A stretch of DNA of 64,000 bases from the NCBI GenBank assembly GCA_965655095.1, contig OZ296649.1, positions 94,674,001-94,738,000 of the forward strand, read 5' to 3'. Source of the DNA: Haplodiscus bocki. Lineage: Eukaryota. The notes under the pieces are model-generated. The model worked only from the letters and a program-made list of their open reading frames with translations. It was not told where the DNA came from and did no database searches. The translations under genes were made by a program, and so were the position numbers. This document shows, piece by piece, positions 19,359-51,600 of the stretch. Positions within the stretch are counted from its first letter, which is position 1. Every line of letters starts with the position of its first letter.

Positions 19359-19418
19359 CTATTTAATAAGTTTATCACAACAATTAGGCTATTTAATAAG
19401 TTTATCACAACAATTAGG
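19359..19418 (-). other. Two tandem copies of a 30-nt candidate spliced-leader sequence at the LINE 5' end
   Basis: Minus strand cAG|CCTAATTGTTGTGATAAACTTATTAAATAG x2, immediately inside the TSD. The last 14 nt recur at the 5' end of a different LINE (23186-23199). Confidence 0.7.
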
Positions 19419-20430
19419 CTGCACTTCAATAATCACTGACTCCAAAACAATAACTTCAACAAAAATTTGGATTCCGCCCTTCCGAGAGTCTCAAGGGCAA
19501 CCGGCTATACGAAGACATTTTGGTACTTCATGGTTTCAACTTCCTCTGCCACTGTTCAGCCTACCTCTTCGTTTACGTTGTAGGAAGTAGCGATACTGCG
19601 GCAGCTGGTGATATCCCATGCCAATAGCCTACCCACTTTCTGTTGTATGTCGCCTTTTGCCCAGCTGGGCTAAACACTGCATTGCTGCGTGGTATCGTCT
19701 AGTGGTTCGAGATCTTTGTTTTCCCAGACATCTGCTTTCGTGCCTTGCAAGGTGTTCTAAAATTTTGACTAATAATAAGTTTTGTGGCAATTAGAAACCT
19801 AATCAGGCGCTATAACTAAACTCAAATAGAAAACCATATTTTGTACATTGAACCACTTAAATTTTTAGGATTTCACGTGCTGGACCCTTAATATAGAACT
19901 CTAAGGGCACTGAAAACTTAGATTGGATAAAAAAAAACTAGCTAACATAATATGGGTGACAATAAATCAGAGTGGTAACATAAAGAGATAGCAACGTAAG
20001 ATGGCTGCGGCGAGTTTTGTTGAAGTGAAAAAGTCTATTCAGTTCATAAAAATGGAAATAGCTACCGCTACCATACAGCAACACACTGCCACAAAAAAAC
20101 CGAGATTCACACAGCAGCACCAAAAAAAACTACAACCCGAGCTCAACCTTTTATTTCCGCCCATACGTAGAAATGGAAAGCAAATAGTCCACTGAACGCG
20201 TGCTTTTCTTACGTTTACTTTCCAATTGAAAATGCCCGACGCTTCTGGATACAAAACTTTTATCAAACTACATCAAAGTTGCCGTACAAATTGACTGGAA
20301 TAGAAAAATTTCCAATTCTTACACAATGAGTTCTTTAAAAAAATATATGTATTCTCGAAAAACATTTTTTTTCAAAATCAATGAGAATGGCAAAAACGAT
20401 CTAGTCTGCGTATCTACTGGTATTATTTTC

Positions 20431-20550: not shown

Positions 20551-21748
20551 ATCCCCCAATAAAGTTTGATACTGAAATCGCTGAGTTAATTTCGTCATTT
20601 CGGATTGATCAGACTAGGGAGATTTTCCGAAGCGATGATTTTCGCAGCTGTACGGGACATTCTTTCGATTCCGCGAACGTTTCTCTGCCATTTGGACTGG
20701 CAAAAATTGGATTCTCATTTCGCTCCTGCTGAGGCTCCTTCGTCGACTGTTGACCATTGTCTTCGTCGGGTGTACACACTTGATTTTCGATTTCGCTGGC
20801 CGGGACTGGTGCTGCGGGCATCGTTGCTCTTTGGTCAGAATCAACAACGTCGGCGGAATTTGGTTATAAACGAGGGACGTCGCATTGCATTCTCCGGCTA
20901 TTCTCTTTCGATTGCACTTGGTTCGAGTCTAGTATTTCGCTGCACCCTGGGGCCAATGTCTTTGTGGAAACGGTGTCAATGCGACCGCTAGGGGAAGCGA
21001 TTCGGGTTTAATGAGGGCCAACAACCTCGAAAATCGTCACAGGTCAAGAAACTGGGTCCTCCTTGCCACGTAAATATTTCCGCAAGAATGCGTGATTCCC
21101 AATGGTGGGACACGGAGGCTAACACTAACCAAGTTCACGATGTCCCTCAAATTTGATGTCTTGAGTGTGGTGTTTCATCAGATGCGGTACACAACATGGT
21201 TCTGATGATAGATAAGGCATCTGGAAGTACGATTTCTCAGAAATAAGGATTCAATAGACGACTCTCCAGGGAAATGGCGGTCTTGAATTTTGTTAGCTTG
21301 AACCTCTCGCATTGACCTTTACCTCATGGATTATATGGAGTTCTCATAGAGTGTGGAATTTCAATGTCCGTGCAGAAACTTTCGAACTCCGCAGACAAAA
21401 TTTGAATTCCACGGTCGCTATGAATAATTGATGGAGTTCCCAATACAGGTAAAAATTTCCGAAGATGTAGTTTCGGTTGAAGTGACCTCCTCGATACTAA
21501 ACACCAAGGAGATACGACTGTGATCATAGATTGTTCTCGATGGACATCGGTTTTCAGTCCCATATAAAAGTCTCCTCGGACCGACGAGGTCGATAGATAA
21601 CCGTTCCAAGGGACGAGTAGCTCCAACAACGGCAGAGGGTAACTTCGGTTTGAAGAAGGTTAGTTTAATCTCTTGACATGTCCGGCACTCAGATTTAGAT
21701 GACTTGACCCCGGCTAGAGACAAGGCGTAACTGTGCCGTCATAAAATT

Positions 21749-23185
21749 CTGCTGCTGCAAATGAATTCTTACTAAAATCAGTCAATATCTTGCTAAATAT
21801 TGTAAGAAGCTTAATCGACTTGAACAAAAGAATTAAATTTGCTGACTATGTCTACAGACTTAACTTTGACGTTTTACTTTTAACTGAGACATGGCTCACT
21901 TTTGACATAAAAAAGGCAGAACTGTTTCTTCCCGATTATGATATTATACGAAGCGAAAGACCAACTGAATGAGACGAACTGAATCAGATACAAAGCGATA
22001 AACCAACTGAATCAGATGCGTCTCGCCATGGCGGTGTAACGATAGCTGTGAAGAAAACAATCAAAACCGAGGAAGTTAGTGTGGCTGAATTACCCTTATC
22101 AGTTCAATCTCCACATCGCGTTACTAGGCTAATTGGCTTAGAACCTTTGTACATCGCAGTTCTCTACAATCCTCCAGCGGGAAGCAAATACCAGATATTT
22201 ATTGCGGATTTACAAAAAATATTCCGCTTCCTTGGGAAAACGTGCCCCAAGCGTCTCCTCTTTACCGGTGACTTCAACATGCCTCACACAAGTTGGAGTA
22301 CCTTTGATTCTGTCAACGAATATGAAAAGCAGCTCGCTTCGCTTCTGTTCGATTTGAAATTAAAACAATATATCGATTTCATTACAACAAAGAAAAGCTG
22401 TTTGATCTTGTGTTTTGCAATGAAGGTTCAATCATTATTGATACAAAGCTGTGCGGAAATCTGTCTCGGTTCTCAGACTATTTTCCCATCACGATCAATA
22501 TGTCCATAAATAGTAAAGTTGCAGAGAAATTATCAACGGGATACTTTAGTTACTGCAATTGTGATTTCCAGGCATTGAATGAGGATATCATTGCCAATCC
22601 ATCCGAACCGTACTCCTATAGCAATGTGGATGTCAATACGAATCTTTGGTATGAATGGATACTTAAATTGATCGAAAAACATGTTCCTATCCGAACTAAA
22701 AACAGACAACTACTGCCTCCATGGACATCTGATGAGACATCACATCACATGAACAAGATAAAAACTGAGCGAAGAAAATTACAGAAAAGGGGACTCTGTT
22801 CGTCTGAAAAACTGAAAAAGCTAACCGAAGAATGTGATCAATTGCAAACAATTGATAGAGTCGAATACGAACAAAGGCTTTTTGCCAGCAGACATAAAGG
22901 ACGAATTTTCAAATAGTTGAAAAGCCTGAAAAAAGACAGTCTACCGCCAGTCATAAAATCTGAAAGCTTGAAAAAGGATGCTAGCACAGATCTCGAGAAA
23001 GCAAACCTTTTTAAAAATTACTTTACTACGGTAGTGACTAATGACGATTATGAATACTTCGAACCAAGCGAACAGCATAATTTTGGGGAAAATGACATCA
23101 TAATAACGGAAGATTTAATAAAAGCGGAGCTAAAGTCACTTAACGTCTCGAAGAGCAGAGGTCACGATTCGATACCACCCATATT
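21749..23185 (+). mobile_element. L2/CR1-group LINE copy A, 5' part (APE domain and linker), 5'-truncated
   Basis: LLNIVRSL, LLLTETWL, YDIIRSER, HGGV, LYNPP, FTGDFNMP motifs. Breaks off at ..KSRGHDSIPPI (ATATT, 23181-23185). Confidence 0.9.
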
Positions 23186-23199
23186 AACTTATTAAATAG
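23186..23199 (+). other. Partial candidate spliced-leader sequence (3' 14 nt) at the 5' end of LINE copy B
   Basis: AACTTATTAAATAG is an exact match to the 3' end of the 30-mer at 19359-19418, and it sits exactly at the insertion junction. Confidence 0.65.
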
Positions 23200-23271
23200 T
23201 TTCAGTGCCTGATTGAAAAGACCGGATACTGGAGAGCCCTTACGTGAAAGGGATTCTAGAAGCCGGCATTT

Positions 23272-23925
23272 ATGGTTTATGTAATTGGAGCAAGTTCGCT
23301 GAACGCTACAATCGGAAGGGTACCCTACAATGTGAGGAGAGAATTATTTGGCAGAAGCTACAGCCTTGGAGGGCTCAGTTTCAACTGGAACGCTAAAAAC
23401 CCATTGAAGGTGTTACAAAATCTACTGACAGGAAGGGGTGTACTTGCCAGAAAGTATAAAGTGATAATTTGGCACGACATTATAAACAATTCGATTAGCA
23501 AACATCGAAGCAACAACTACAGGGCCATAAGTGTTGAAAATTTACTCCAAATACTGCGTGACTTCAGTCATAGAATCGAAGCCGTAGTATATTGTAGACG
23601 TGAAGGAGCCCCTGACAATTTTCGCAAATTGTTGGAGAGCAAAATTACCATACTAGACGTTAAATCAAACCTTCTATCCCACCGCAACAGTAAAGATTTC
23701 ATAGTTCTGCACGACCTGAAACAAACCCACCCGTCCACTGAACTCGAAGCCCGATTGCTCTCAACTGTTTGGCGGCACAGAAAGAACTTAAAATTTTTTT
23801 ATAAGAATAACAAGAAGAAGTCGAAACCGTGCGAACCAAAGAAGCAAAACAAGCCATCAAAAAAAGAAAGAGAAAAAGCTAAACCGAAGAAAGAAAAGCT
23901 GTCTTCATCTTGTGTTTTGCAATGA
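23272..23925 (+). CDS. LINE ORF1, SGNH/GDSL-hydrolase-like, 217 aa (last ~10 codons come from the deletion junction)
   Basis: VIGASSL, SLGGLSF, VIIWHDIINN and DLKQTHP motifs plus a lysine-rich tail. Homologous to 18625-19239. Confidence 0.72.
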   Translation: MVYVIGASSLNATIGRVPYNVRRELFGRSYSLGGLSFNWNAKNPLKVLQNLLTGRGVLARKYKVIIWHDIINNSISKHRSNNYRAISVENLLQILRDFSHRIEAVVYCRREGAPDNFRKLLESKITILDVKSNLLSHRNSKDFIVLHDLKQTHPSTELEARLLSTVWRHRKNLKFFYKNNKKKSKPCEPKKQNKPSKKEREKAKPKKEKLSSSCVLQ

Positions 23926-24685
23926 AGATTCAATCATCAATGATACAAAGCTGTGCGGAAATCTGTCTCGGTTCTCTGACCATTCTCCCATCACGATCAA
24001 TATGTCCATAAATAGTAAAGTTGCAGAGAAATTATCAACGGGATACTTTAGTTACTGCAATTGTGATTTCGATGCATTGAATGAGGATATCATTGCCAAT
24101 CCATTCGAACCGTACTCCTATAGCAATGTGGAGGTCAACACGAATCTTTGGTAAGCATGGATAATTAAATTGATCGAAAAACATGTTCCTATCCGAACTA
24201 AAAACAGACAACTACTGCCTCCATGGACATCTGATGAGACATCACATCACATGAACAAGATAAAAACTGAGCGAAGAAACTTACAGAAAAAGGCACTCTG
24301 TACGTCTGAAAAGCTGAAAAAGCTAACCGAAGAATGTGATCCATTGCAAACGAATGTTGGAGTCGATTACGAAGAAAGGCTTTTTGCCAGCAGACATAAA
24401 GGACGACTTTTCAAATATTTGAAAAGCCTGAAAAAAGACATTCTAGCGCCAGTCATAAAATCTGAAAGCTTGAAAAGGGAAGCTAGCACAGATCTCGAGA
24501 AAGCAAACCTTTTTATTAATTACTTTACTACGGTAGTGACTGATGACGATTATGAATACCTCGAACGAAGCGAACGGCATAATTTTGGGGAAAATGACGT
24601 CATAAAAACGGAAGATTTAATAAAAGCAGAGCTAAAGTCACTTAACATCTCGAAGAACAGTGGTCACGATTCGATACCACCCAGA

Positions 24686-26237
24686 TTGCTTAAAAAATGC
24701 GGGGGAACAATCGCTACGTCACGTCGAAACTTGTTCAGTAATATCAAGCGATTGCGCAAATTTCCATCTGCATGGAAGACTGGAATTGTCAGTCCGATAT
24801 ACAAAGACGGTGACAAAAAAGAAGTTTCGAACTATGGGCCAGTTACTCTCATAAACATAATCTCAAAATCATTTGAAAAATTCACTTTTGCACCAATTTA
24901 CACTGCGTTTGCTGATTGGATAAGCAATTTCCAATTTGGTTTTAGGCCGAGACGTTCAGTTGTACTGCAATTACTATACAGTTCATCTCATATCTACTCA
25001 CACTTGAACTCGAGAGACTTTGTTAATTTATTTGTTTTATTTGATTTCTCTGCAGCGTTTGACAAAATAAAGCATAGTGTCCTGATGAAAAAGTTACTAC
25101 AAATTCCCATCTCCAAGGCTTAATTCGAACTGATTCAAGACTACTTATTAGGAAGAACACAGAAAGTGCGAATAGGTGACCAGTTATCGAATGAGCGGAC
25201 TGTAACATCTGGAGTACCACAGGGATCAGTATTGGGACCCTTACTCTTCTTGATATACATAAGCGATCTCCCCACTGTTGTTTTCTCATCGATGGCTTTA
25301 CTGTTTGCCGATGATTTAAAACTGATTTTCAATGGGAGAGCTGAACAAGAATCCTTAGGAAAACTTCAAATCGATTTACAAGCCCTTCACAACTGGAGTA
25401 TGCAAAATCATCTACTATTCAATTTGAAAAAGTGTTCAATCAGCAAATTTCAGTACGGTAGAAACAAGAACACTCCCCAAGGAGTTTGTTTTATCATGGA
25501 GGGTCGAAATTTAAACCACAAAAGCCTGGTTCGGGACGTCGGCCTGTTCATAGATCAATCACTAAACTGGAACGAGCATGTGAAAGTAAGAGTCGGAAAG
25601 GCAGCAAAATTGTTCTTTCTGTTAAGAAGAAGTACCATGCCGATCATTTGCACCCAAACTAAAGCCCATCTTTACCGATCAATAATAACAACGTCGTTTT
25701 TTTGCATCCGAATGCTGGCAACTAAGAAATACGAGTTTGAAAATCATTGAAAACTTCAATAAAAAGGTTGTGAAGTGGATTTGCGGAAATTGGGACTATA
25801 GGGATGCTTTGGTCCAATCGAATTTATTACCACCACTCTACTTTAGAGTCCTCAAAGACCTTTTACTCTTCAGTAACAATTTGGAAGGAAGACACGATGT
25901 AGAGTTTTCGAAAGAATTCAAAATCAGTAACAGTGGTAGAAGAAGACGTGTTGTGCTCCCAGACACTAGACATGAAATACAGAGGCAAAACTTTTGGTAC
26001 AGGACTGTATTCAGAATAAACGTCGTCCAAAGATTTTTTGATTTCTTCAACCCGGAGAATCTGAAGAAGAAACTGATTGAATATATGTGGATGTATTTTA
26101 ATAGACATTGGACTGAAAACAATCGCTGTACTTGGATTTTCATTTGTTCATGTGTAAACTGTCTTGCCAATCCTAGATCCTAGATTGTAACAGAGGGGTA
26201 AAATTCCCCAGTGGCATATCCACGAAGTTATAATAAT

Positions 26238-26308
<71 letters not shown>

Positions 26309-29300
26309 TAAAATTTTTTAAAAAATGCGGGGGATCAATCGCTACGTCCCTTCGAAACTTGTTCAGTAATATCAAGCGATTGCGCAAATTTCCATCTGCA
26401 AAGAAGACTGGAATTGTCAGTTCGATATTCAAAGACGGTGACAAAAGAGAAGTTTCGAACTGTAGGCCAGTTACTCTTCTAAACATAATCTCAAAATCAT
26501 TTGAAAAATTCACCTTTGCACCAACTTACACTGCGTTTGCTGAATGTATAAGCAATTTCAAATTTGGTTTTAGGCCGAGACGTTCAGTTGTACTGCAATT
26601 ACTATACAGTTTATCTCATATCTACTCACACTTGAACTCGAGAGACTTTGTTAATTTATTTGTTTTATTTGATTTCTCTAAAGCGTTTGACAAAATAAAG
26701 CATAGTATCCTGATGAAAAAGTTACTACAAATTCCCATCTCCAAGGCTTTATTGGAACTGATTCAAGACTACTTATTAGGAAGAACACAGGAAGTGCGAA
26801 TAGGTGACCAGTTATCGAATGAGCGGACTGTAACATCTGGAGTACCACAGGAATCGGTATTGGGACCATTACTCTTCTTGATATACATAAACGATCTCCC
26901 CACTGTTGTTTTCTCATCGATGGCTTTACCGTGTGCCGATGATTTAAAACTCATTTTCAATGGGAGAGCTGAACAAGAATCCTTAGGAAAACTTCAAATC
27001 GATATAAAAGCCCTTCACAACTGGAGTATGCAAAATCATCTACTATTCAATTTGAAAAAGTGTTCAATCAGCGAATTTCAGAACGGTAGAAATAAGAACA
27101 CTCTCGAAGGAGTTTGTTTTATTATGGAGGGTCGAAATTTAAACCACAAAAGCCTGGTTCGTGACGTCGGCTTGTTCATAGGGGAATCACTAAACTGGAA
27201 CGAGCATGTGGAAGTAAGAGTTGGAAAGGCAGCAAAATCGTTCTTTCTGTTAAGAATAAGAACCATGCCGATCATTTGCACCCAGGCTAAAGCCCATCTT
27301 TACCGATCAATAATAACAACGTAGTTTTTTGCATCCGAATACTGGCAACTAAGAAATACGATTTTCAAAATCATTGATAAATTCAATAAAAAGTTTCTAA
27401 AGTGGATTTGCGGAAATTGGGATTATAAGGATGCTTTGGTCCAATCGAATTTATTACCAACATTATACTTTAAAGTGCTTAAAGACCTTTTACTCTCCAG
27501 TAACTTTTTGGAAGGAAGACACGATGTAGATTTTTCGAAAGAATTCAAAATCACTAACAGTGGTAGAAGAAGACGTGTTGTGCTCCCAGACACTAGACAT
27601 GAAATACAGAGGCAAAACTTTTGGTACAGGACTGGTTTCAGAATAAACGCGGTCCAATGATCTTTTGATTTCTTCAACCCGGAGAATCTGAAGAAGAAAC
27701 TGATTGAATATATGTGGATGTATTTTAATAGACATTGGACTGAAAACAATCGCTGTACTTGGATTTTCATTTGTTTATGTGTAAACTGTCTTGCCAATCC
27801 TAGATCCTAGATTGTAACAGAGGGGTGAAGTTCCCCAGTAGCATATCCACGAAGTTAAAGTAATAATAATAATAATAATAATAGTAATAATGATATTTTT
27901 TAAAAAATGCGGGGGATCAATCGCTACGTCCCATCGAAACTTGTTCAGTGATATCAAGCGATTGCGCAAATTTCTATCTGCATGGAAGTCTGGAATTGTC
28001 AGTCCGATATACAAAGACGGTGACAAAAGTGAAGTTTCGAACTGTAGGCCAGTTACTTTTCTAAACATAATCTCAAAATCATTTGAAAAATTCATCTTTG
28101 CACCAATTTACACTGCGTTTGCTGAATGTATAAGCAATTTCAATTTTGGTTTTAGGCCGAGACGTTCAGTTGTACTGCAATTACTCTACAGTTTATCTCA
28201 TATCTACTCACACTTGAACTCGAGAGACTTTGCTAATTTATTTGTTTTATTTGATTTCTCTAAAGCGTTTGACAAAATAAAGCATAGTATCCTGATGAAA
28301 AAGTTACTACAAATTCCCATCTCCAAGGCTTTATTGGAACTGATTCAAGACTACTTATTAGGAAGAACACAGAAAGTGCGAATAGGTGACCAGTTATCGA
28401 ATGAGCGGAATGTAACATCTGGAGTACCACAGGGATCGGTATTGGGACCATAACTCTTCTTGATATACATAAACGGTCTCCCCACTGTTGTTTTCTCATC
28501 GATGGCTTTACTGTTTGCCGATGATTTAAAACTGATTTTCAATGGGAGAGCTGAGCAAGAATCCTTAGGAAAACTTCAAATCGATATACAAGCCCCTCAC
28601 AACTGGAGTATGCAAAATCATCTACTATTCAATTCGAAAAAGTGTTCAATCAGCGAAATTCAGAACGGTAGAAATAAGAACACTCTCGAAGGAGTTTGTT
28701 TTATTATGGAGGGTCCAAATTTAAACCACAAAAGCCTGGTTCGTGACGTCGGCCTGTTCATAGATGAATCACTAAACTGGAACGAGCATGTGAAAGTAAG
28801 AGTTGGAAAGGCAGCAAAACCGTTCTTTCTGTTAAGAAGAAGTACCATGCCGATCATTTGCACCCAGACTAAAGCCCATCTTTACCGATCAATAATAACA
28901 ACGCAGTTTTTTGCATCCCATTGCTGGCAACTAAGGAATACGAGTTTCAAAATCATTGAAAAATTCAATAAAAAGGTTCTAAAGTGGATTTGCGGAAATT
29001 GGGATTATAAGGATGCTTTGGTCCAATCGAATTTATTACCAACATTATACTTTAAAGTGCTTAAAGACCTTTTACTCTCCAGTAACATTTTGGAAGGAAG
29101 ACACGATGTAGATTTCTCGAAAGAATTCAAAATCATTAACAGTGGTAGAAGAAGACGTGTTGTGCTCCCAGACACTAGACATGAAAGACAGAGGCAAAAC
29201 TTTTGGTACAGGACTGGATTCAGAATAAACGTCGTCCAAAGATTTTTTGATTTCTTCAACCCGGAGAATCTGAAGAAGAAACTGATTGAATATATGTGGA

Positions 29301-32300
29301 TGTATTTTAATATACATTGGACTGAAAACAATCGCTGTACTTGGATTTTCATTTGTTTATGTGTAAACTGTCTTGCCAATCCTAGATCCTAGATTGTAAC
29401 AGAGGGGTAAAATTCCCCAGTGGCACATCCACGAAGTTAAAGTAATAATAATAGGAATAATAATAATAATAATGATATTTTTTAAAAAATGCGGGGGATC
29501 AATCGCTACGTCCCATCGAAACTTGTTCAGTGATATCAAGCGATTGCGCAAATTTCTATCTGCATGGAAGTCTGGAATTGTCAGTCCGATATACAAAGAC
29601 GGTGACAAAAGTGAAGTTTCGAACTGTAGGCCAGTTACTTTTCTAAACATAATCTCAAAATCATTTGAAAAATTCATCTTTGCACCAATTTACACTGCGT
29701 TTGCTGAATGTATAAGCAATTTCAAATTTGGTTTTAGGCCGAGACGTTCAGTTGTACTGCAATTACTCTACAGTTTATCTCATATCTACTCACACTTGAA
29801 CTCGAGAGACTTTGTTAATTGATTTGTTTTATTTGATTTCTCTAAAGCGTTTGACAAAATAAAGCATAGTATCCTGATGAAAAAGTTACTACAAATTCCC
29901 ATCTCCAAGGCTTTATTGGAACTGATTCAAGACTACTTATTAGGAAGAACACAGGAAGTGCGAATAGGTGATCAGTTATCGAATGAGCGGAATGTAACAT
30001 CTGGAGTACCACTGGGATCGGTATTGGGACCATTACTCTTCTTGATATACATAAACGGTCTCCACACTGTTCTTTTCTCATCGATGGCTTTACTGTTTGC
30101 CGATGATTTGAAACTGATTTTCAATGGGAGAGCTGAGCAAGAATCCTTAGGAAAACTTCAAATCGATATACAAGCCCCTCACAACTGGAGTATGCGAAAT
30201 CATCTACTATTCAATTTGAAAAAGTGTTCAATCAGCGAATTTCAGAACGGTAGAAATAAGAACACTCTCGAAGGAGTTTGTCTTATTATGGAGGGTCGAA
30301 ATTTAAACCACAAAAGCCTGGTTCGTGACGTCGGCCTGTTCATAGATGAATCACTAAACTGGACCGAGCATGTGAAAGTAAGAGTTGGAAAGGCAGCAAA
30401 ACCGTTCTTTCTGTTAAGAAGAAGTACCATGCCGATCATTTGCACCCAGACTAAAGCCCATCTTTACCGATCAATAATGTCGTTTTTTGCATCCCATTGC
30501 TGGCAACTAAGGAATACGAGTTTCAAAATCATTGGAAAATTCAATAAAAAGTTTCTGAAGTGGATTTGCGGAAATTGGGATTATAAGGATGCTTTGGTCC
30601 AATCGAATTTATTACCACCACTCTACTTTAAAGTGCTTATAGACCTTTTACTCTCCAGTAACATTTTGGAAGGAAGACACTATGTAGATTTTTCGAAAGA
30701 ATTCAAAATCACTAACAGTGGTAGAAGAAGACGTGTTGTGCTTCTTGACACTAGACATGAAATACAGAGGCAAAACTTTTGGTACAGGACTGGTTTCAGA
30801 ATAAACGCCGTCCAATGATCTTTTGATTTCTTCAACCCGGAGAATCTGAAGAAGAAACTGATTGAAAATATGTGGATATATTTTAAAAGACATTGGACTG
30901 AAAACAATCCCTGTGCTTGGATTTTCATTTGTTTATGTGTAAACTGTCTTGCCAATCCTAGATCCTAGATTGTAACAGAGGGGTAAAATTCCCCAGTGGC
31001 ATATCCACGAAGTTATAATATTAATAATAATAACAATAATATTTTTTAAAAAATGCGGGGGATCAATCGCTACGTCCCTTCGAAACTTGTTCAGTAATAT
31101 GAAGCGATTGCGCAAATTTCCATCTGCATGGAAGACTGGAATTGTCAGTCCGATATACAAAGACGGTGACAAAAGAGAAGTTTCGAACTGTAGGCCAGTT
31201 ACTCTCCTAAATGTTATCTCAAAATCATTTGAAAAATTCATCTTTGCACCAATTTACACTGCGTTTGCTGATTGTATAAGCAATTTCCGATTTGGTTTTA
31301 GGCCGAGACGTTCGGTTGTACTGCAATTTTTATACAGTTTATCTCATATCTACTCATGTTTGAACTCGAGGAATTTGCTAATTTCTTTGTTTTATTTGAT
31401 TTCTCTAAAGCGTTTGACAAAATAAAGCATAGTATCTTGATGAAAATTTTACTACAAATTCCCATCTCCAAGGCTTTATTCGAACTGATTCAGGACTACT
31501 TAGTAGGAAGAACACAGAAAGTGCGAATAGGTGACCAGTTATCGAATGAGCGGACTGTAACATTGGGACCATTACTCTTCTTGATATAAATAAACGATCT
31601 CCCCACTGTTGTTTTCTCACCGATGGTTTTACTGTTTGCCGATGATTTGAAACCGATTCTCAATGGGAGAGCTGAACAAGAATCCTTAGGAAAACTTCAA
31701 ATCGATTTACAAGCCCTTCACAACTGGAGTATGCAAACAAATCTTGTATTCATATTGAAAAAGTTTTCAATCAGCGAACTTCAGTACGGTGGAAATAAGA
31801 ACACTCCCGAATGAGTTTGTTTTATTGTGGAGGGTCGAAATTTAAACCACAAAAACTTGGTTCGTGACCGCGGCCTGTTCATAGATGAATCACTAAACTG
31901 GAACTAGCTAGTGAACGTAAGAGTTGGAAAGGCAGCAAAATCGTTCTTTCTCTTAAGAAGAAGTACCATGCCGATCATTTGCACCCAGACTTAAGCGCAT
32001 CTTTACCGATCAATAATAACAACATCGTTACTTTTGCATCCGATTGCCGGGAACTAAGAAACCCGAATTTCAAAATCATTGAAAACTTCAATAAAATGGT
32101 TCTGAAGTGGACTTGCGGAAATTGGTTTAAAAGATGCTTTGGTCCAATTCATTTATTACCACCACTCTACTTTAAAGTGCTTAAAGACCTTTTACTCTTC
32201 AGTAACATTTTGGAAGGAAGACACAATGTAGATTTTTCGAAAGAATTCAAAATCACTAACAGCGGTAGAAGAAGACGTGTTGTTCTTCCAGACACTAGAT

Positions 32301-34155
32301 ATGAAATACAGAGGCAAAACTTTTGGTACAGGACTGGATTCAGAATAAACGTCGTCCAAAGATCTTTTGATTTCTTCAACGCGGAGAATCTGAAGAAATT
32401 GATTGAATATATGTGGATGTATTTTAATAGACATTGGACTGAAAACAATCCCTGTACTTGGATTTTCATTTGTTTATGTGTAAACTGTCTGGCCAATCCT
32501 AGATCCTAGATTGTAACAGAGGGGTGAATTTCCCCCGTGGCATATCCACGAAGTTAAAGTAATAACAATAATAATATTAATAATAATATTATTTTTTAAA
32601 AAATGCGGGGGATCAATCGCTACGTCCCTTCGAAACTTGTTCAGTAATATCGAACGATTGCACAAATTTCCATCTGCATGGAAGACTGGAATTGTCAGTC
32701 CGATATACAAAGACGGTGACAAAAGAGAATTTTCGAACTGTAGGCCAGTTACTCTCCTAAACATAATCTCAAAATCATTTGAAAAATTCATCTTTGCACC
32801 AATATACACTGCGTTTGCTGATCGTATAAGCATTTTCCGATTTGGTTTTAGGCCGAGACGTTCGGTTGTACTGCAATTATTATACAGTTTATCTCATATC
32901 TACTCACATTTGAACTCGAGGACTCTGTTAATTTCTTTGTTTTATTTGATTTCTCTAAAGCGTTTGACAAAATAAAGCATAGCATCTTGATGAAAAATTT
33001 ACTACAAATTCCCATCTCCAAGGCTTTATTCGAACTGATTTAAGACTACTTAGTAGGAAGAACACAGAAAGTGCGAATAATTGACCAGTTATCGAATGAG
33101 CGGACTGTAACATCTGGAGTACCACAGGGATCGGTATTGGGACAATTACTCTTCTTGATATAGATAAACGATCTCGCCACTGTTGTTTTCTCATCCTTGG
33201 TTTTACTGTTTGCCGATGATTTAAAACGGATTCTCAATGGGAGATCTGAACAAGAATCCTGAGGAAAACTTCAAATCGATTTACAAGCCCTTCACAACTG
33301 GATTATGCAAACAAATCTAATATTCAGTTTGAAAAAGTGTTCAATCAGCGAATTTCAGTACGGTAAAAATAAGAACACTGCCGATGTAGTTTGTTTTTTT
33401 ATAGGTGGTCGAAATTTAGACCACAAAAATCTGGTTCGTGACCGCGGCCTGTTCATAGATGAATCACTAAACTGGAACTAGCTAGTGAACGTAAGAGTTG
33501 GAAAGGCAGCAAAATCGTTCTTTCTCTTAAGAAGAAGTACCATGCCGATCATTTGCACCCAGAGTTAAGCCCATCTCTACCGATCAATAATAACAACGTC
33601 GTTACGTTTTGCATCCGATTGCTGGGAACTAAGAAATACGAATTTCAGAATCATTGAAAACTTCAATAAAATGGTTCTGAAGTGGACTTGCGGAAATTGG
33701 TTTATAAAGATGCTTTGGTCCAATCAAATTTATTACCACCACTCTACTTTAAGGTGCTTAAAGACCTTTTACTCTTTTGTAACATTTTGGAAGGAAGACA
33801 CGATGTAGATTTTTCGAAAGAATTCAAAATCACTAACAGCGGTAGAAGAAGACGTGTTGTGCTTCCAGACACTAGATATGAAATACAGAGGCAAAATTTT
33901 TGGTACAGGACTGGATTCAGAATAAACGTCGTCCAAAGACCTTCTGATTTCTTCAACCCGGAGAATCTGAAGAAGAAACTGATTGAATATATGTGGATGT
34001 ATTTTAATATACATTGGACTGAAAACAATCCCTGTACTTGGATTTTCATTTGTTTATGTGTAAACTGTCTTGCCAATCCTAGATCCTAGATTGTAACAGA
34101 GGGGTAAAGTTCACCAGTGGCATATCCACGAAATTATAATAATAATAATAATAAT
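24686..34155 (+). repeat. Tandem array of six ~1.58-kb LINE 3' halves (RT domain, 3'UTR, (TAA)n tail)
   Basis: Units end at about 26310, 27892, 29473, 31038, 32588 and 34155. Units 2-6 all restart at (at)attttttaaaaaatgcgggggatcaatcg and end CVNCLANPRS* followed by the 3'UTR and (TAA)n. Each has its own stops and indels. Confidence 0.97.
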
Positions 34156-36767
34156 AATTGCCACATTCAAACGACACCTGGACGATGGAGTTGTTTGTGA
34201 AGTAGCGCCAAAGCTGCTTGCTAGCAGCGGACTGTCGGGATGAAGCGTCCACGCCAAGGTTGTTCGAGTCCCTCTTGTAGACAACCTCGTTCGAAAACTC
34301 TAAGGGTTTTAGCTTCCACCGGTATAACTTTTCGTTTTTCAGACGAAACAGTTGACGTGAAATTCTGAAGGAGGTTGATTTCTGATCCGTTGTAAGAACA
34401 GTGGGGTAGGTTCTGACAAAATCACACCATTTCTTTATAACTTCTAAAAAAGACATATTTTCTCGCTCTATTGATGACTTTCGTTGTCTTGGCTGCAACA
34501 TTGACTTAAAAAAAGTGGAGGTGCTTAACTGGCCTTTGACAAAAAGGCCCCGATAGCTGTTTTGGCTTCATCCATTTCTATATTGGGCGGTTGCCCATCT
34601 GACCATCTGATGATGGGACAGATCGTGTCGACCAAACTAATTCGTTCTTAATTCCACCAATGACGGATAAACAGTCATTGTTGGGAGGTAGGGCGGATTG
34701 TTTCAACGCTTCCAAAAGAACTCTAGTCTGACTTTTGCAGAGTATTGGAAGACCCACTTGGCATAAAATGAGAAGAAGCCGATTGACCGCGTCAGCTGTG
34801 GCTCGCTGACAAGAACAGGATAATCCAATAAAATTCGGAGTCGCTCCCGATCAGGTCTTTCGGAACCTTGCTCGATGACTTGACCAAGTAAGTTTAGCTG
34901 CTGGGTCCCCAAGACGCATTTTTCTATGTTGAGTGTAAGGTCGACCTGAGCTGCGGCATCCAAAAAACTTTTGCAGCTCAGATTGTGTGCTTCTTCCATT
35001 TTGTCTCCAATATAAGTGTCGTCGAGATAAAGAACGGCTCCCGAGAGACCATTTTTCCCTATCAACTGTTCCATAAAACGTTGGAACGCTGGCACTGCGT
35101 TTGTATCACCAAATGGGATGCATATAGATTGCCAAAAATGTTCACACGCTTCCAATGCTTTGAACGTGTGGTCTTCTTTAGAAATCACGACCTGATGATA
35201 GGCAAACGTGAGATCGAATTTACCGAAGAACTTGTGTGCGGCGCCAGGGTTGAACGTAGGTTGAATTTCGAGAAATGGATAAGCGTCAACGCCGCTATAC
35301 AGATTGACGGTCTCTGCAAAGTCGATAATCATACTTCGTTTCTTGTTTCGCCTTTCACGTTAAAGGCCTCCGTTCTCAATGGGGACACGGATTGTACGAT
35401 TGTGCCCAGGCTTTTTCGATTGTGTACGATTCCGTTGAATTCCGTCTTTTTGAAAAGTTTTTTCGAATGAAACATACCGCGAGATTTAGCTGAAGAGATT
35501 TCGTCAGAGAAGAAGATCAGCGGATCGACTTCCATCAATGGAAAAACACACTGCAACAAACGCTGTTGTTTAGAAATGCGAAAGTGATCGGCAGTCTTGA
35601 ACCAATTGCAGTGAGTGATACTACTTTATGACTACGTAGAATGTCCATTTCGGTAATTACATCAGCAATAAAGATGTCAACGACGCAAAGTCGGCAGGAG
35701 TTTGCTTCAACTTTGATAGCGAGGTTGACCTCTGTATACCCGTGGATTATGAATTAGGGTTCGGTTGCGAGACGTGCTGTTGATCATTCCTTGGTTACAC
35801 TTAGACCGAAGTGTTGTGCTAGTTTGAGAGTGATAAAACTATCGGTCGCAGCGGGATCGTTCAGTGCTGTCACCGCGAGTGGCCCGTTGATAATAACATT
35901 CTCATGAACCTTTTTTTGTAATGAATATGTCCGATGAGTGGCATAAAACAACTGAGATAGAGTCTCCAAAACGAACGTCGCCCTACACAGCAATTGAGGA
36001 GGATCAACAAATGATGGTCCAGTGACCAACCTTAGCGCACTTTTGACAATTCTCGCGCTTCACGTGGCAATGTGCACAAGGACGAGGGCTAGTGCCGCAG
36101 TATATACATTCTTGTTCCTTGTTGTTGCTGTTGGGATTGTTTGCCCGTTTGCTAGCGATTGTTCTGTAAAGCTGATACGGAGTCGTTGGATCTTGTAGTA
36201 CCTTTGAAACTGATGTGAAACTAGATGGTTCCGATCTGTCCGCTTGAACAATCCACTGACATCTGAATGGCTTAAGCGAGCAAAATACAGTTATCCATTG
36301 ACTTATAACATGCAGCTATAACAGTCTATCACGCATTTGATAGTATCCAATTCCGACAACCATTGCGTTTCTTTAAAGTAAAAGACACTGCGCATCTGCT
36401 TTGATGTCTCCGCATTCGCATAACTCGACTAAGCTTTTCAGACGTTTGATTGAGCCGAGATTTGACCTGCCTTCTCTTTGTCGACTGGATGGAAGTTGCT
36501 ATGGGGCATGTATGAGATATATTGGTTTCTAGAATTGTCTCGAACTTTAGCCATGGCATCTGCGAATGTGCAGATTTTCGAATCAGGCGGAAAAAAAACC
36601 GGGCCTTCTCAACTACGAAGGAAAATGAGCCTCTGAGCATCTTCGGTGATCACATTTATGGATAAGTTACCGGGAATGCTTGTTTTCACCACGAAATTTG
36701 ATCGGACATCGGTTTCGGCAGCAGAGTGAGTGGTTTGAGTTTCCTTTTGAGGTACTTTAGTTAAATT

Positions 36768-45636: not shown

Positions 45637-48600
45637 GAATGAAGGAGAGAACCATTTGGAAGTTGCTGGCTGTGGCATTTGGTGTGTTCCGTTTACTGAT
45701 GGAACAAAATTTCAAAGATCACTTGTTGTGCGACATTGGATGTATAAAAATTTTAACTGTAGAATAAGGGTCTTTTTGCAGTCTCCGTTTTAAGATTTCT
45801 CTGGCAATTTAGAGAGGGGGAACTCGGGAGCATTGACGCCTTATAGAGCGACAGAAGTGGCACGATTTTTTCAAGTCACTGTTGGGGGAATTTCCCGAAG
45901 AAGTTTTTCGTAGAGTTTTCTTGAAGATTCTTGAGTAATGGAATGCAATGCGTTGGTTTCATGGGGTTCATTTAGAACAACAAGAAAAAGTTCTACTTTT
46001 GGGTGAAAAGATATAAATCGGAAGGGTCTCTGCCTCACTTGATCGATGTTAGTAGTGGAAGTCCTCAAGTTTTTGATGCATTAGGAGTTTGGAATTGTTT
46101 GGTGTGGGTGATGCGTTTTTTGGACTGGATGTTTTATAGGAAAGTGGAACTGAGCGACATGACAAGGGTGAGTAGGGATAAAAAGTGGCCTTCCTGGGAC
46201 GTTTGGTTTTGGTGATACAAATAAAAGATTGTTCCGTTTCATCCGAATGATTGGGTAGACGTGAAGTTACGAGCGTGTTCTGGATTTTCCAAAAAGTTGA
46301 TCAAACTGAAATTTCTCAATTTGGCAGTATTGCGAGTAGTTTTTAAAGTTCGGGTGTTTGAACGAGTGGTTTTTGATGTCTACCGCCGGAAGTTTGGTCA
46401 GAACCAGAAGTGACAATCAAGTGCTACTGTGACTAATTGTTCTCCACATAAACACTCCAACGAAAACTGTTTTTTTTGTTGGCGCTTTTCTCATTTTGCA
46501 ACATATCTTGTGAAACAAGTCCCGGAAAAGTCTTCAAGACGTGTCAGTGAAAACCTATCGGCCAAAACTATCAGGAAAGTCAATGACGTTACTCAAAACG
46601 CGAAAACTAACGGTAAACAGACATAGCTCGAGACCAAACGTGATCGTAACAGTGCAATTTGTGAGTACCGGGGAGGCAAGCTGCTTGGCTACGTACAGTT
46701 CCAGGTGTTAAGGAGTAGTTGTTTAGCGTGGTTACGGAGTTTTTGGCAGAAGTAGGGACACGTATTTGCAGGGAAAAAAATTAAGATTTGATATACCCAC
46801 CGATGGACTGGGCACGGTTGAAATTTGAGAGAAAGTTAGTGATTATTCAACCAATGAGTTTTTTCTATGTGTACATCGGATACCTTTGGAACTACGCTTA
46901 CCGTTTCGTGACAAACATTCAACAAAAAAGGCTTATCCAACTGCGTACAGTGATTTTCTGTTAACATACGGGCCCTATCTGCCGTCTGCAGTGGTTCTTT
47001 GGTAGGTGGCACCACTAGCCACAACGCGGGACAAATTGCGTGATAAAATCTCACAAGAATTTGTAGATTAGAAAATAATTTCGTTTAAATAAAATTTTTA
47101 CTCGTAAAGTAATTTGAGCAATCCATATTTAACAACAGTGAGGCTGCTTTTGAACCCATGACATGAATTCTTTTCTTTTTTCTTTTTAGACACGCAAACA
47201 GTTGTTGCTGAACGTGTATTTTACCAAAAAATTTTTATGCATTTGCTCTAGTTAAAAACTTGTTTTGGAGTTCAACAAGGTTGATTTCAGAAACGGATTA
47301 AGTACAGAAGAGAATCAAAAATTTTACATTTCCGAGAGAAGAGTGTTGGGGGTCATTTTTGTTGACTTTGTGGGTTGCTTTTGCTTACCACGGTAATGAG
47401 TGTTATTATGGACGGTTAAGGTTGATCTGCGGGGTCTGCATGGTTTCCCGGTGGCTCAGGCTTTTGGATGTGTGGGAGGTTGAGGTGCAGGGCTTATAAG
47501 TATTATGTGGACTAAAGTAGGGCGAAAGCATGCTAAGGAAAAATTTAAAAGAACAGTATAACATACTTTCTATTGAAAAAACTTTGTGTCTGAAACTGTT
47601 CTGACTGCATGTGGGAACTAATGAAAATGCTTGTGAAGTTCGTTTTTTAGTGTTAGTATAAATTACAGTACATAATAAGAGCTAATATCGTATAAAAAGT
47701 GAAAGATTTAGAGTAGTTACTCAATGCCTTTAAGCAAAAGACCGATTGTTTTAAGTCTGTCAAATGCCTTCTTTGTTCTTGTAAGGAGACGTCCTATAGT
47801 TTGTAAAAATAAGAGCTTGAACAAGTATGCAGTTACTGTTTAATAATAAGAGTTTAATGTTTATTAGCAGAGCAGCGACGGCCGCTATTATAAAGAATCG
47901 GAAAGTTTTGAAATGTTGTCAAATTGGAAAATTTCACGTCATTTTTTGCCAAAAAATATTGAATTCATGGTTCTAGAAAACATCTTTTGCAAAATATATG
48001 ACAGAAACCCAGTGATAGCTGGGTGCCTTGTTTTGACTACAATTGAACAATATTTGTATTTTCCGATTGCCATCAATGTGATGGGCCAAACTCTTCTCGA
48101 GTTTTCTTTCTCCATATGGTACTCCTTAGTTTTACTTCGTAGCTCTTGGTTCTGTCTTCAGATTGCAAAGGTTGCCAGAAAGGTCCTTAGTTGACCTGTA
48201 GGCACCAGTCGGACACCCACGAACATTGTTGTAATTGAGGATTTGTAGAATTTTAGAGTCTTAACAAAAAAAACAAATTGGGGTAGAAATGATGTTTTGT
48301 GTTGCTTCAGCTTGGAGAGTTCGTTGGGCACCAGATTTTCCGTGTGGTTACATGTCTTATTGCTTTTAGACAATTTCCAGGGCAAAACTGCGTTTTGTTC
48401 GTATCTTTGGATTCATTCCGAAGTTTTGGAGCGCAGGAGCAGTATCTAAAAAACAATGTCTGTAAAATTTTAACATTCGCTCGGGAATAATATCTAAAAT
48501 CAGACAGCACGGCTGAAGTCCTGAAAAAACGTCAAGATTTTTTCACCTAAAGTAAAACGGTAATAAGATTTTGAAACCAGGAGAAAGGTGAAAATCGCCC

Positions 48601-51600
48601 ACAATACTTCTCTATTTCAATCTCTAAATGTGAAAATTCTATCAGCACAGAAAATAGCCGAACAATCGATTGATAGAAAAGATTTTTTTTGACTCAGGCC
48701 CAATAAGTATGGCAATTTTTAGTAAAAGTCTTCGATGCAGCATCTGTACAAAAAATGTCCACTCGGCGTGGTTCAAAAAATGAACCTTTCCATTTCACAT
48801 GCCCAACATTTTTGTAAAGCCTGTTTTATCCTCGTCACGTACAAACTCAATACAGCCAGGGGACTGTCCGTGGAAAAAGATCATGTCATTCACAGTATTT
48901 TTTCATTTTTTTAACATCTGCAATTTTTCAAAGATTTTTGAGAGGAAATCATGGTTTTTCAGCACATTATCAAAAGCTTCAGTTTTAATGCGAATGGGCG
49001 GTGAAATTGTTGTTTGACTTTCTTTTTCTCATGATAAACAATATTTTTGTAAGAGTAGTTAGATAAGATTTTCTGTTTGATAATTTTGATGAAGTCATCG
49101 CGTCAAAACTTTGTCTACTATCAAGGCATCAAAAAATTACCAGTTAACCCTTATATGCTCGGAATAGAATTTTTTTCCATGCACGGTGAAAGTGGGCCGT
49201 GCCAAATTAAATGCAATGGCCGCAGTTAAAAAGTTCCGCAAGTAAAATTACATGCAGATGCAGACGAAACTTTCCACAGGTAACGATTGCCAGCAGCTTC
49301 CGCAGGTAACTATTGAAAATTTACCTGCGCCCGCAAATAAACTATGTGGAGCCTCTACTGTGCGTGTCAAGTAGGATGTTTTCAAGCCTAGTGACTTCTT
49401 TTTCTATGCAGTAACAAGCATTTTGATCAAATTAAACATTTACTGCCCTTAAAGTGAACGGTGAATCCTTCGAAAGTGATTTCGTTCAGAATATTATGGA
49501 CTGTTCCTTGATGGTTATTCAAAGCTCTGTCCGAGAAACAGAGCTAGTTTGAAAAGTCTTCAATCTGGCAAAAATGAGTAGGATATGACTGCTATCACTT
49601 TTCTCTATCTTCATCGAGTTGCGGAAAAAGGTTAAAAAAACGAAGATTTGGGGAAAGACACTCACGAAAATGAAGTACGTGAAAAAAACTGCTCAACAGC
49701 ACATACACTCTGAGAGACTTTTGAAGTTTCTGAGTTTGTAGAAATCAAGGAGCTTCAATTGAAGAGATGAACGCGTTGCTTTTCATTGAAAGTCCTAAAA
49801 TTAAGTTTACAGGACAAGCATTAACCAAATTTTACTGAAACCTGGCGACAACATTTGGCGCGAAGGTTGTTAAGTCTTTGAGGTTCTAATGTTGTTCAGA
49901 ATTAAGGTTATAATTTTGCGAGAAAACACTTGGGAAGAATGAGGGAGAGAACCATTTGGAAGTTGCTGGCTGTGGCATTTGGTGTGTTCCGTTTACTGAT
50001 GGAACAAAATTTCAAAGATCACTTGTTGTGCGACATTGGATGTATAAAAATTTTAGCTGTAGAATAAGGGTCTTTTTGCAGTCTCCGTTTTAAGATTTCT
50101 CTGGCAATTTAGTGAGGGGGAACTCGGGAGCATTGACGCCTTATAGAGCGACAGAAGTGGCACGATTTTTTCAAGTCACTGTTGGGGGAATTTCCCGAAG
50201 AAGTTTTTCGTAGAGTTTTCTTGAAGATTCTTGAGTAATGGAATGCAATGCGTTGGTTTCATGGGGTTCATTTAGAACAACAAGAAGAAGTTCTACTTTT
50301 GGGTGAAAAGATATAATTGGGAAGGGTCTCTGCCTCACTTGATCGATGTTAGTAGTGGAAGGCCTCAAGTTTTTGATGCATTAGGAGTTTGGAATTGTTT
50401 GGTGTGGGTGATGCGTTTTTTGGACTGGATGTTTTATAGGAAAGTGGAACTGAGCGACATGACAAGGGTGATTAGGGATAAAAAGTGGCCTTCCTGGGAC
50501 CTTTGGTTTCGGTGATGCAAATAAAAGATTGTTCCGTTTCATCCGAATGATTGGGTAGACGTGAAGTTACGAGCGTGTTTTGGATTTTTCAAAAAGTTGA
50601 TCAAACTGAAATTTCTCAATTTGGCAGTTTTACGAGTAGTTTTTAAAGTTAGGGTATTTGAACGAGTGGTTTTTGATGTCTACCGCCGGAAGTTCGGTCA
50701 GAACCAGCAGTGACAATCAAGTGCTACTGTGACTAATTGTTCTCCACATAAACACTCCAAAGAAAACTGTTTTTTTTTGTGCGCGCTTTTCTCATTTTGC
50801 AACATATCTTGTGAAACAAGTCCCGGAAAAGTCTTCAAGACGTGTCAGTGAAAACCTATCGGCCAAAACTATCAGGAAAGTCAATGACGTTACTCAAAAC
50901 GCGAAAACTAACGGTAAACAGACATAGCTCGAGACCAAACGTGATCGTAACAGTGCAATTTGTGAGTACCGGGGAGGCAAGCTGCTTGGTTACGTGCAGT
51001 TCCAGATGTTAAGGGGTAGTTGTTTAGTGTGGTTACGGAATTTTTGGCAGAAGTAGGGGACACTTATTTGCCGGGAAAAAAATTAATTATTGATATACCC
51101 ACCGATGGACTGGGCACGGTTGAAATTTGAGAGAAAGTTAGTGATTATTCAACCAATGAGTTTTTTCTATGTGTACATCGGATACCTTTGGAACTACGCT
51201 TACCGTTTCGTGACAAACATTCAACAAAAAAGGCTTATCCAACTGCGTACAGTGATTTTCTGTTAACATACGGGCCCTATCTGCCGTCTGCAGTGGTTCT
51301 TTGGTAGGTGGCACCACTAGCCACAACGCGGGACAAATTGCGTGATAAAATCTCACAAGAATTTGTAGATTAGAAAATAATTTCGTTTAAATAAAATTTT
51401 TACTCGTAAAGTAATTTGAGCAATCCATATTTAACAACAGTGAGGCTGCTTTTGAACCCATGACATGAATTCTTTTCTTTTTTCTTTTTAGACACGCAAA
51501 CAGTTGTTGCTGAACGTGTATTTTACCAAAAAATTTTTATGCATTTGCTCTAGTTAAAAACTTGTTTTGGATTTCAACAAGTTTGATTTCAGAAACGGAT

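What the first reader, a model, noticed from the sequence alone, without database searches (positions are those of the whole stretch)
21749..34155. A LINE inserted into a copy of itself seeded a 1.58-kb tandem array
Seen: copy A stops at CCACCC-ATATT (23185). Units 2-6 each restart, after a (TAA)n tail, at or next to ATATT-TTTTAAAAAATGCGGGGG, the sequence that continues the ORF2 frame (PPIFFKKCGG; compare PPRLLKKCGG in copy B). ATATT therefore behaves as the TSD of B inside A. Inference: the 3' half of B followed by the 3' half of A formed a direct repeat that unequal recombination expanded to six units. This explains the identical start points, which independent 5' truncations would not give. 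It is a readable record of a TE-derived satellite forming.
Basis: partly seen in the sequence, partly recalled or inferred. Interest (0 to 1): 0.7.

Follow-up and report, generated by a model that had tools for sequence, protein, structure and literature searches.

The report
LINE-in-LINE insertion seeded tandem array
One jumping gene (a LINE) landed inside an older copy of itself, and the back-to-back duplicate of its 1.55-kb rear part was then re-copied by misaligned recombination into six units; this is a well-preserved example of a known way for repeat arrays to arise.

Summary

- **The block is one insertion.** Window 21750-34158 sits inside the pol gene of an older LTR retrotransposon. 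Its two flanks lie next to each other in three paralogous copies elsewhere.
- **Copy A.** This LINE is cut short at its 5' end and stops at CCACCC-ATATT (23185).
- **Copy B (23186-26311).** It starts with the last 14 nt of the family's 30-nt leader. It has a 1.84-kb internal deletion, with no second copy found, and ends in a (TAA)n tail.
- **The units.** Five more 1.55-kb units follow. Each starts at (A/T)(A/T)ATT-TTTTAAAAAATGCGGGGG, exactly where A stopped.
- **No dispersed subfamily.** Of 57 genomic sites that carry this anchor, only these five have a tail upstream. All the others run on into the LINE.
- **Recombination footprint.** Units 2-6 share array-private changes at the 5' end. Units 2-4 share B's private changes in the 3' third. 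That polarity is what unequal exchange between A's and B's 3' parts predicts.

Long reads were not available, so copy number is not independently confirmed. The mechanism is known (McGurk and Barbash 2018), and earlier scan notes report many LINE-derived arrays in this genome. I rate it a new member of a known kind, of moderate to low interest.

The parts
21250..21749 (-). Left flank: host LTR retrotransposon pol, integrase part
   Evidence: ORF 21324-21629 (-) hits PF00665 rve at 33.1 bits. In three paralogs this flank lies next to the right flank.
21750..23185 (+). Copy A, 5' part. It matches positions ~1910-3342 of the 4.9-kb family element, is 5'-truncated, and ends at CCACCC-ATATT.
   Evidence: 94.6% identity to a full-length copy over 1437 bp. 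About 35 dispersed matches begin where A begins. Sequence read.
23181..23185 (+). ATATT, left copy of the candidate target-site duplication of B
   Evidence: It is part of the family sequence CCACCCATATTGTTT and recurs after each tail.
23186..26311 (+). Copy B: leader remnant 23186-23199, 5'/ORF1 region to ~23891, internal deletion junction at 23887-23891, ORF2 remainder, tail 26231-26311
   Evidence: Window 23183-23891 matches the first 707 bases of the element and 23887-26253 matches positions ~2546 to the end, with a 5-bp overlap. The deletion junction was not found again in the genome (top 40 of 88 candidate matches scored).
24684..26230 (+). Unit 1, the 3' part of B (starts AGATTGCTTAAAAAATG)
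26312..27893 (+). Unit 2 with tail (tail 27858-27893)
27894..29475 (+). Unit 3 with tail
29476..31039 (+). Unit 4 with tail (its tail resembles B's tail)
31040..32589 (+). Unit 5 with tail (body groups with unit 6; 3' end and tail are like units 2 and 3)
32590..34158 (+). Unit 6 with A's original plain (TAA)n tail, joined to the right flank
   Evidence: A unitig at the depth of unique flank sequence crosses 34082-34269 with no mismatch in run X5.
34159..35332 (-). Right flank: host LTR retrotransposon pol, RNase H-like and RT parts
   Evidence: PF00078 at E 1.6e-15 for 34703-35332 (-). Weak PF17917 hit at E 0.0011 for 34079-34501 (-). Contiguous with the left flank in paralogs.

Best explanation
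The proposed history has four steps.

1. A 5'-truncated copy (A) of a 4.9-kb APE/RT LINE with a (TAA)n tail inserted into the pol gene of an LTR retrotransposon.
2. A second copy of the same family (B) then inserted in the same orientation into A's ORF2 at ATATT. B was made from a leader-bearing transcript and lacks 1.84 kb internally.
3. This put B's 3' 1.55 kb plus tail directly in front of A's 3' 1.55 kb plus tail, making a perfect tandem dimer.
4. Misaligned homologous recombination between these repeats, by unequal crossing-over with some gene conversion, added units stepwise up to six. Every new junction copies the founding junction: B tail, then ATATT, then A's 3' part.

What is shown: the nested anatomy, the single-insertion status of the block, the uniqueness of the junction, and the recombinant mosaic. 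What is inferred: that the exchanges were unequal sister-chromatid or homologue crossovers, and their order. No function is implied, since all units carry stops.
For: - **Array and junction strings:**
- **Family sequence at the break:**
- **B's 714-bp head is the family's 5' end.** It starts at the same point as full-length copies, whose heads carry the 30-mer CCTAATTGTTGTGATAAACTTATTAAATAG.
- **Junction is unique to this locus.** A tail-preceded anchor occurs 5 times in 1.5 Gb, all here. The other 51 anchor sites read ACCC/ATCC...ATATT upstream. Other truncated copies stop at other points: B positions 270, 498, 678 and 706.
- **Empty-site paralogs.** The left flank ends and the right flank starts 7, 4 and 11 bases apart in C10, C258 and C8, where 8, 5 and 12 unaligned bases are expected. 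That gives contiguity with a 1-bp overlap. The host pol order RT, RNase H, integrase is interrupted exactly there.
- **Array-private derived changes.** These are states seen in at most 1 of 25 dispersed copies.
  - Units 2-6 share columns 4, 154 and 171.
  - Unit 1 (B) shares 7 events with units 2-4 or 2-3, all in columns 1024-1460.
  - Units 5+6 share 26, and units 3+4 share 13.
  - The chance that all 3 A-type events lie 5' of all 7 B-type events is 1/120.
- **Polarity.** A hybrid that is A-like at the 5' end and B-like at the 3' end is the only polarity an expansion product of unequal exchange can have.
- **Trees.** In the 5' part, unit 1 stands apart from (U2,(U3,U4)) at 99/97 and from (U5,U6) at 100/100. 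In the 3' part, (U1-U4) is supported at 91/88.
- **Depth.** Unit-specific unitigs in run X5 have depth 33-38, and the unique flank has 39.
Against: - No spanning long reads were available. The runs are kept as short unitigs that break at the tails, so six units rests on the assembly.
- The target-site duplication is ambiguous at 2-5 nt. A itself shows 0-1 bp of duplication.
- Units 5 and 6 carry about 40% more changes than the other parts (88 and about 85, against 58-71), and A's 5' part is not older than B. A simple clock does not fit.
- The crossover point of the first exchange is only bracketed, between columns 171 and 1024.
- Earlier scan notes (unchecked), one second array in this window and one array on C6 show that kb-scale arrays form in this genome without any nested seed. 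The seed explains the register here but may not be required for amplification.
Confidence: 0.85

Rival explanations
1. A non-autonomous or habitually truncated subfamily that starts at ATATT inserted five times in a row into the (TAA)n tail of the previous copy.
For: Family members end in (TAA)n, and several 3' junctions look AT-rich, so a preference for TAA-like targets is conceivable. Tail-to-internal junctions formed by repeated insertion are known in Drosophila (PMC5932611).
Against: No copy outside this array starts at this position: 0 of 51 dispersed anchor sites. The start coincides to the base with A's break, which this model leaves to chance at roughly 5 in 4900. Units share 13-26 changes absent from 25 dispersed copies, in a mosaic pattern. 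Independent cDNAs would not carry these.
Confidence: 0.03
2. The array is an assembly artefact, for example a mis-expanded repeat.
For: No long read spanning the array could be examined.
Against: Units differ by 2.7-8.3%, with unit-specific indels and different tails. Artefactual expansion gives near-identical units. Unit-5- and unit-6-specific unitigs with no mismatch occur in read sets of two samples, at the same depth as the unique flank.
Confidence: 0.03
3. The nested dimer is the seed, but a different process did the amplifying. One option is excision of a one-unit circle by recombination between the two repeats, followed by rolling-circle copying and reintegration. Another is replication-based template switching, as may underlie the many other arrays in this genome.
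For: The three basal lineages (unit 1, units 2-4, units 5-6) are nearly star-like in the 5' part, which is compatible with an early burst. The genome holds many kb-scale arrays without nested seeds (scan notes). Units 5 and 6 show excess and clustered changes, as mutagenic repair synthesis might leave.
Against: Divergence is hierarchical: 1.6% for units 3/4 in the 5' part, about 4% for unit 2 against 3/4, and 5.5% for units 5/6. This indicates several events spread over time. Different segments of one unit have different nearest relatives, as repeated homologous exchange or conversion produces.
Confidence: 0.09

Closest known systems
TE tandem dimers by double insertion, expanded by unequal exchange (McGurk and Barbash 2018, PMC5932611; R1 array and hobo array of Drosophila melanogaster)
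   Same: Two insertions of one family create a tandem junction that holds a target-site duplication. All later junctions descend from that one dimer, and expansion is by unequal exchange. The paper states that tail-to-internal junctions can also arise from nested insertions.
   Different: Here the second copy landed inside the first, not at the same flanking target. The repeat unit is therefore only the part of the element 3' of the insertion point. Both founders are still attached to the array, and the recombinant polarity can be read. The array is small, at six units.
Other LINE-derived single-locus arrays in this genome (scan notes s1-356337, s1-382577, s1-381250; C6:67738098-67759785, seen here)
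   Same: kb-scale head-to-tail arrays built from dead LINE sequence at a single locus.
   Different: Those units are internal pieces, or LINE plus neighbouring DNA, with arbitrary boundaries. The C6 unit is 2.6 kb of LINE plus 1.49 kb of non-LINE sequence. Here the unit boundary is exactly an element tail joined to a nested-insertion site.
Tandem LTR retrotransposons formed by LTR-LTR unequal recombination
   Same: Direct repeats supplied by the element itself serve as the substrate for unequal exchange.
   Different: A LINE has no terminal repeats. The direct repeat was created by a self-nested insertion.

Membership tests
APE-type non-LTR retrotransposon (LINE) | Apurinic-like endonuclease domain upstream of a reverse transcriptase domain | tested here: met
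   In the full-length copy L055, PF03372/PF14529 hit at E ~1e-12 and PF00078 at E 8.7e-32. A covers the endonuclease region, and B and the units cover the RT region.
APE-type non-LTR retrotransposon (LINE) | Simple-repeat or A-rich 3' tail, variable 5' truncation, no terminal repeats | tested here: met
   (TAA)n tails occur on all copies. Truncations occur at several different points. The clade (CR1, I, L2 or other) was not determined.
Tandem array seeded by double or nested TE insertion and expanded by unequal exchange | Founder junction: the tail of one copy joined, through a target-site duplication, to the sequence of the other copy | tested here: met
   The order is A...CCACCC-ATATT, then B and its (TAA)n tail, then ATATT-TTTT and the rest of A. 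The duplication is 2-5 nt long.
Tandem array seeded by double or nested TE insertion and expanded by unequal exchange | All array junctions are the same and occur nowhere else in the genome | tested here: met
   5 of 5 junctions are in the array and 0 of 51 dispersed anchor sites share them.
Tandem array seeded by double or nested TE insertion and expanded by unequal exchange | The two founders are distinct insertion events | tested here: met
   B has its own leader-bearing 5' end and an internal deletion with no second copy found. A is truncated at another point. Flanks of the whole block are contiguous in paralogs.
Tandem array seeded by double or nested TE insertion and expanded by unequal exchange | Internal units are recombinants with the 5' side from the downstream founder and the 3' side from the upstream founder | tested here: met
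   Derived-site map and partitioned trees. The rank test gives 1/120.
Tandem array seeded by double or nested TE insertion and expanded by unequal exchange | Copy-number variation between individuals | not testable with these tools
   Only short unitigs were available, and they break at the tails.
Satellite DNA in the usual sense | A long array of many units, usually tens of kb or more, or present at several loci | tested here: not met
   There are six units over 9.5 kb at one locus. It is at most a nascent array.

The most novel reading that the evidence does not exclude
Self-nested LINE insertions might be a regular seeding route for the unusually many LINE-derived arrays of this genome. This locus would then be the one case where both founders, the founding junction and the first recombinant survive. 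That would make the birth rate of satellites from active LINEs measurable in a non-model animal.
Probability: 0.1. Interest if true: 0.5.

Novelty: new member of a known kind. Interest (0 to 1): 0.3.

Why it matters
How dispersed mobile elements turn into tandem arrays is usually inferred from finished satellites whose origin has been erased. Here every stage can still be read in one 12.4-kb stretch:

- the host element
- the first LINE
- the second LINE inside it, with its leader and tail
- the founding junction
- recombinant units whose polarity matches unequal exchange

This gives a concrete non-Drosophila example for the double-insertion model. It could also serve as a marker locus for copy-number dynamics. 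It does not reveal a new mechanism or a function.

Tried and rejected
- **Foreign 714-bp stretch (23186-23899).** Rejected. It is the family's own 5' end, lying about 1.2 kb upstream of the A part in full-length copies.
- **B as a member of a deleted subfamily.** Rejected. Its deletion junction was not found again in the genome among the matches scored.
- **A much older than B**, which would explain the extra divergence of units 5 and 6. Rejected. In their 809-column overlap A has 23 derived sites and B has 33.
- **A clear target-site duplication for A.** Not found. The paralog arithmetic gives 0-1 bp.
- **Tandem Repeats Finder.** It cannot see the array because its longest period is 500. The repeat finder does see it.
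- **Read support.** Only Logan unitigs were available, so there was no junction-spanning evidence.
- **Paralogous empty sites.** Only their coordinates are used.
- **LINE clade.** I did not try to determine it, because the claim does not depend on it.
- **Word search of earlier findings.** It found nothing.

Full report
**What is there.** The repeat finder shows six in-register copies of a ~1.55-kb segment between 24684 and 34158, with start-to-start spacing 1628, 1582, 1582, 1564 and 1550 bp. Tandem Repeats Finder reports only the (TAA)n tails, because its longest period is 500. Units differ by 2.7-8.3%, and all carry stops.

Reading the sequence gives the following:
- Copy A ends ...GATACCACCC-ATATT at 23185.
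- B's internal homologue reads CCACCC-AGATT-GCTTAAAAAATGCGGGGG.
- Units 2-6 follow their tails with AAATT, ATATT, ATATT, ATATT and TTATT, each followed by TTTTAAAAAATGCGGGGGATCAATCGC.

**The family.** The window is G000:C2:94674001-94738000 in a 1.5-Gb animal genome. An earlier scan note calls it an acoel worm; I did not verify that. Dozens of dispersed copies exist.

Two copies that are 99.8% identical delimit a 4.9-kb element. It has a 211-aa ORF1 without a Pfam hit, an APE endonuclease, a reverse transcriptase and a (TAA)n tail.

Full-length copies begin with all or part of the 30-mer CCTAATTGTTGTGATAAACTTATTAAATAG. This is the reverse complement of the 30-bp repeat at window 19359-19420. 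Scan notes s1-382563 and s1-382616 read it as the animal's spliced leader.

At the critical site the family reads CCACCC-ATATT-GTTTAAAAAATGCGGGGGATCAATCGC. A is therefore family-like up to and including ATATT. The units are family-like from ATATT onward, with one shared G-to-T change.

**Copy B.** The 714 bases after A's break are not foreign. They match the first ~707 bases of the element, starting with the last 14 nt of the leader (AACTTATTAAATAG). At 23887-23891 the match jumps, across a 5-bp overlap, to element position ~2546 and continues to the tail at 26231-26311. This 1.84-kb deletion junction was not found anywhere else in the genome, with the top 40 of 88 candidate matches scored.

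B is thus a separate, nearly complete-5' retrotransposition product, sitting exactly between A's ATATT and the ATATT that heads unit 2. The duplicated ATATT fits a target-site duplication. Because (AAT)n can supply the first bases, only 2-5 nt can be claimed. Other family copies show short or unclear duplications.

**The block is one insertion.** The 500 bases left of 21750 and the 502 bases right of 34158 each match five diverged paralogs at 67-74% identity. In three of them, on C10, C258 and C8, the two matches abut. The gaps are 7, 4 and 11 bases, where 8, 5 and 12 unaligned bases are expected.

The flanks encode RT and an RNase H-like segment on the right and integrase on the left, all on the minus strand. 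They belong to the pol gene of an LTR retrotransposon. A's 5' part and the last unit with its plain (TAA)n tail are therefore the two ends of one original LINE insertion.

**Is the start point a subfamily trait?** No. The tail-preceded pattern occurs five times in 1.5 Gb, all in this array. The through-reading pattern occurs 42 times. Listing 13 upstream bases for every anchor site gives 57 sites. Of these, five have a tail upstream, one is B, and the other 51 read ACCC/ATCC...ATATT or a degraded form of it.

Two further anchor sites have A-part matches directly upstream. Other truncated copies end at other positions. The chance that a truncation point matches A's break within 5 nt of a 4.9-kb element is about one in a thousand.

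**Evidence for recombination.** I took as derived any state seen in at most 1 of 25 dispersed copies. The sharing pattern is:

| Units sharing derived states | Columns or count |
|---|---|
| Units 2-6 | columns 4, 154, 171 only |
| Unit 1 (B) with units 2-4 or 2-3 | seven events, all in columns 1024-1460 |
| Units 2-4 | six |
| Units 3+4 | 13, all before column 1038 |
| Units 2+3 | six, in columns 1020-1171 |
| Units 5+6 | 26 |

Partitioned ML trees agree. In the first 1000 columns, unit 1 stands apart from (U2,(U3,U4)) at 99/97 and from (U5,U6) at 100/100. In the last 568 columns, (U1,U2,U3,U4) forms a group at 91/88.

Middle units that are A-like at the 5' end and B-like in the 3' third are what an unequal crossover gives. 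The downstream repeat (A's 3' part) on one chromatid pairs with the upstream repeat (B's 3' part) on the other. The opposite polarity cannot occur in a gained unit. The rank probability is 1/120.

Tails tell the same story. Unit 4's tail resembles B's. Units 2, 3 and 5 share a GTTAAAGTAATAA variant. Only unit 6 keeps the family-type end next to the flank. At least three gains and some conversion are needed, spread over time. Pairwise divergence is 1.6% for units 3/4 in the 5' part and 7-9% between the two main groups.

**Weak points.**
- No long reads were available. The five runs found are kept as short unitigs that stop at the tails.
- The unitigs do show unit-5- and unit-6-specific sequence at depth 33-38, beside a flank-crossing unitig at depth 39 in run X5. 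That argues against an assembly artefact.
- Units 5 and 6 carry about 40% more changes than the rest, some of them clustered. A's 5' part is not older than B: 23 against 33 derived sites in the overlap. This remains unexplained.
- The genome forms other kb-scale arrays without nested seeds. Examples are the 4.30-kb array at 45637-57435, the C6 array of this same family with 1.49 kb of non-LINE DNA per unit, and several scan notes (unchecked). The seed explains the register here but may not be needed for amplification as such.

**Comparison with known work.** McGurk and Barbash (PMC5932611) showed three things:
- TE dimers arise by double insertion.
- The junction carries the target-site duplication.
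- Such dimers expand by unequal exchange, as in the R1 and hobo arrays.

They also note that tail-to-internal junctions can come from nested insertions. This locus is a self-nested variant of that model in another phylum, with founders and first recombinant preserved. It is a new member of a known kind. It is small (six units at one locus) and has no sign of function.

Noticed in passing
window 45637-57435: A second, unrelated tandem array: 2.74 copies of a 4.30-kb unit at 98.8% identity, with no ORF of 120 aa or more and no similarity to the LINE. It coincides with the strong positive GC skew of 42-56 kb.
   Followed up: partly
G000:C6:67738098-67759785 (L056, L057): Another array of the same LINE family: at least six units of 4113 bp. 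Each unit holds the 3' 2.6 kb of the element plus 1.49 kb of non-LINE DNA, so it is a segmental duplication and not a nested-insertion array.
   Followed up: partly
window 23186-23199; L034, L038, L032, L033, L035, L036, L041 5' ends: Full-length copies start with all or part of the 30-mer CCTAATTGTTGTGATAAACTTATTAAATAG. The same leader is doubled at window 19359-19420 on the neighbouring minus-strand LINE. Some copies carry partial duplications of its last 12-14 nt. This is consistent with retrotransposition of leader-bearing transcripts.
   Followed up: partly
window 31040-34136 (units 5 and 6): These two units share 26 private changes, including clusters at alignment columns 732-734, 863-864 and 903-904. 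They are about 40% more diverged from the family than the other units or A's 5' part. No explanation was found.
   Followed up: partly
window 22396-23185 and 23892-24688: A and B share 4 derived sites in their 809-column overlap. This could be gene conversion between the direct repeats, which lie 1.5 kb apart, or a shared source lineage.
   Followed up: no
L055 2252-5142 (minus strand): In a young full-length copy, the endonuclease ORF and the RT ORF overlap by 4 nt in different frames. This copy is 99.8% identical to another one. The overlap could be a shared frameshift mutation or a frameshift needed for expression.
   Followed up: no
window 21250-21749 and 34159-35332: The host is a diverged Ty3-like LTR retrotransposon on the minus strand, with about five paralogs at 67-74% identity. 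Its pol gene is split between RNase H and integrase by the 12.4-kb LINE block.
   Followed up: partly
run X1: A 2017 run labelled coral metagenome holds a fifth of the sampled words of this LINE region. Only one unitig could be laid at 97% identity. This hints that the animal or a relative lives on corals.
   Followed up: no
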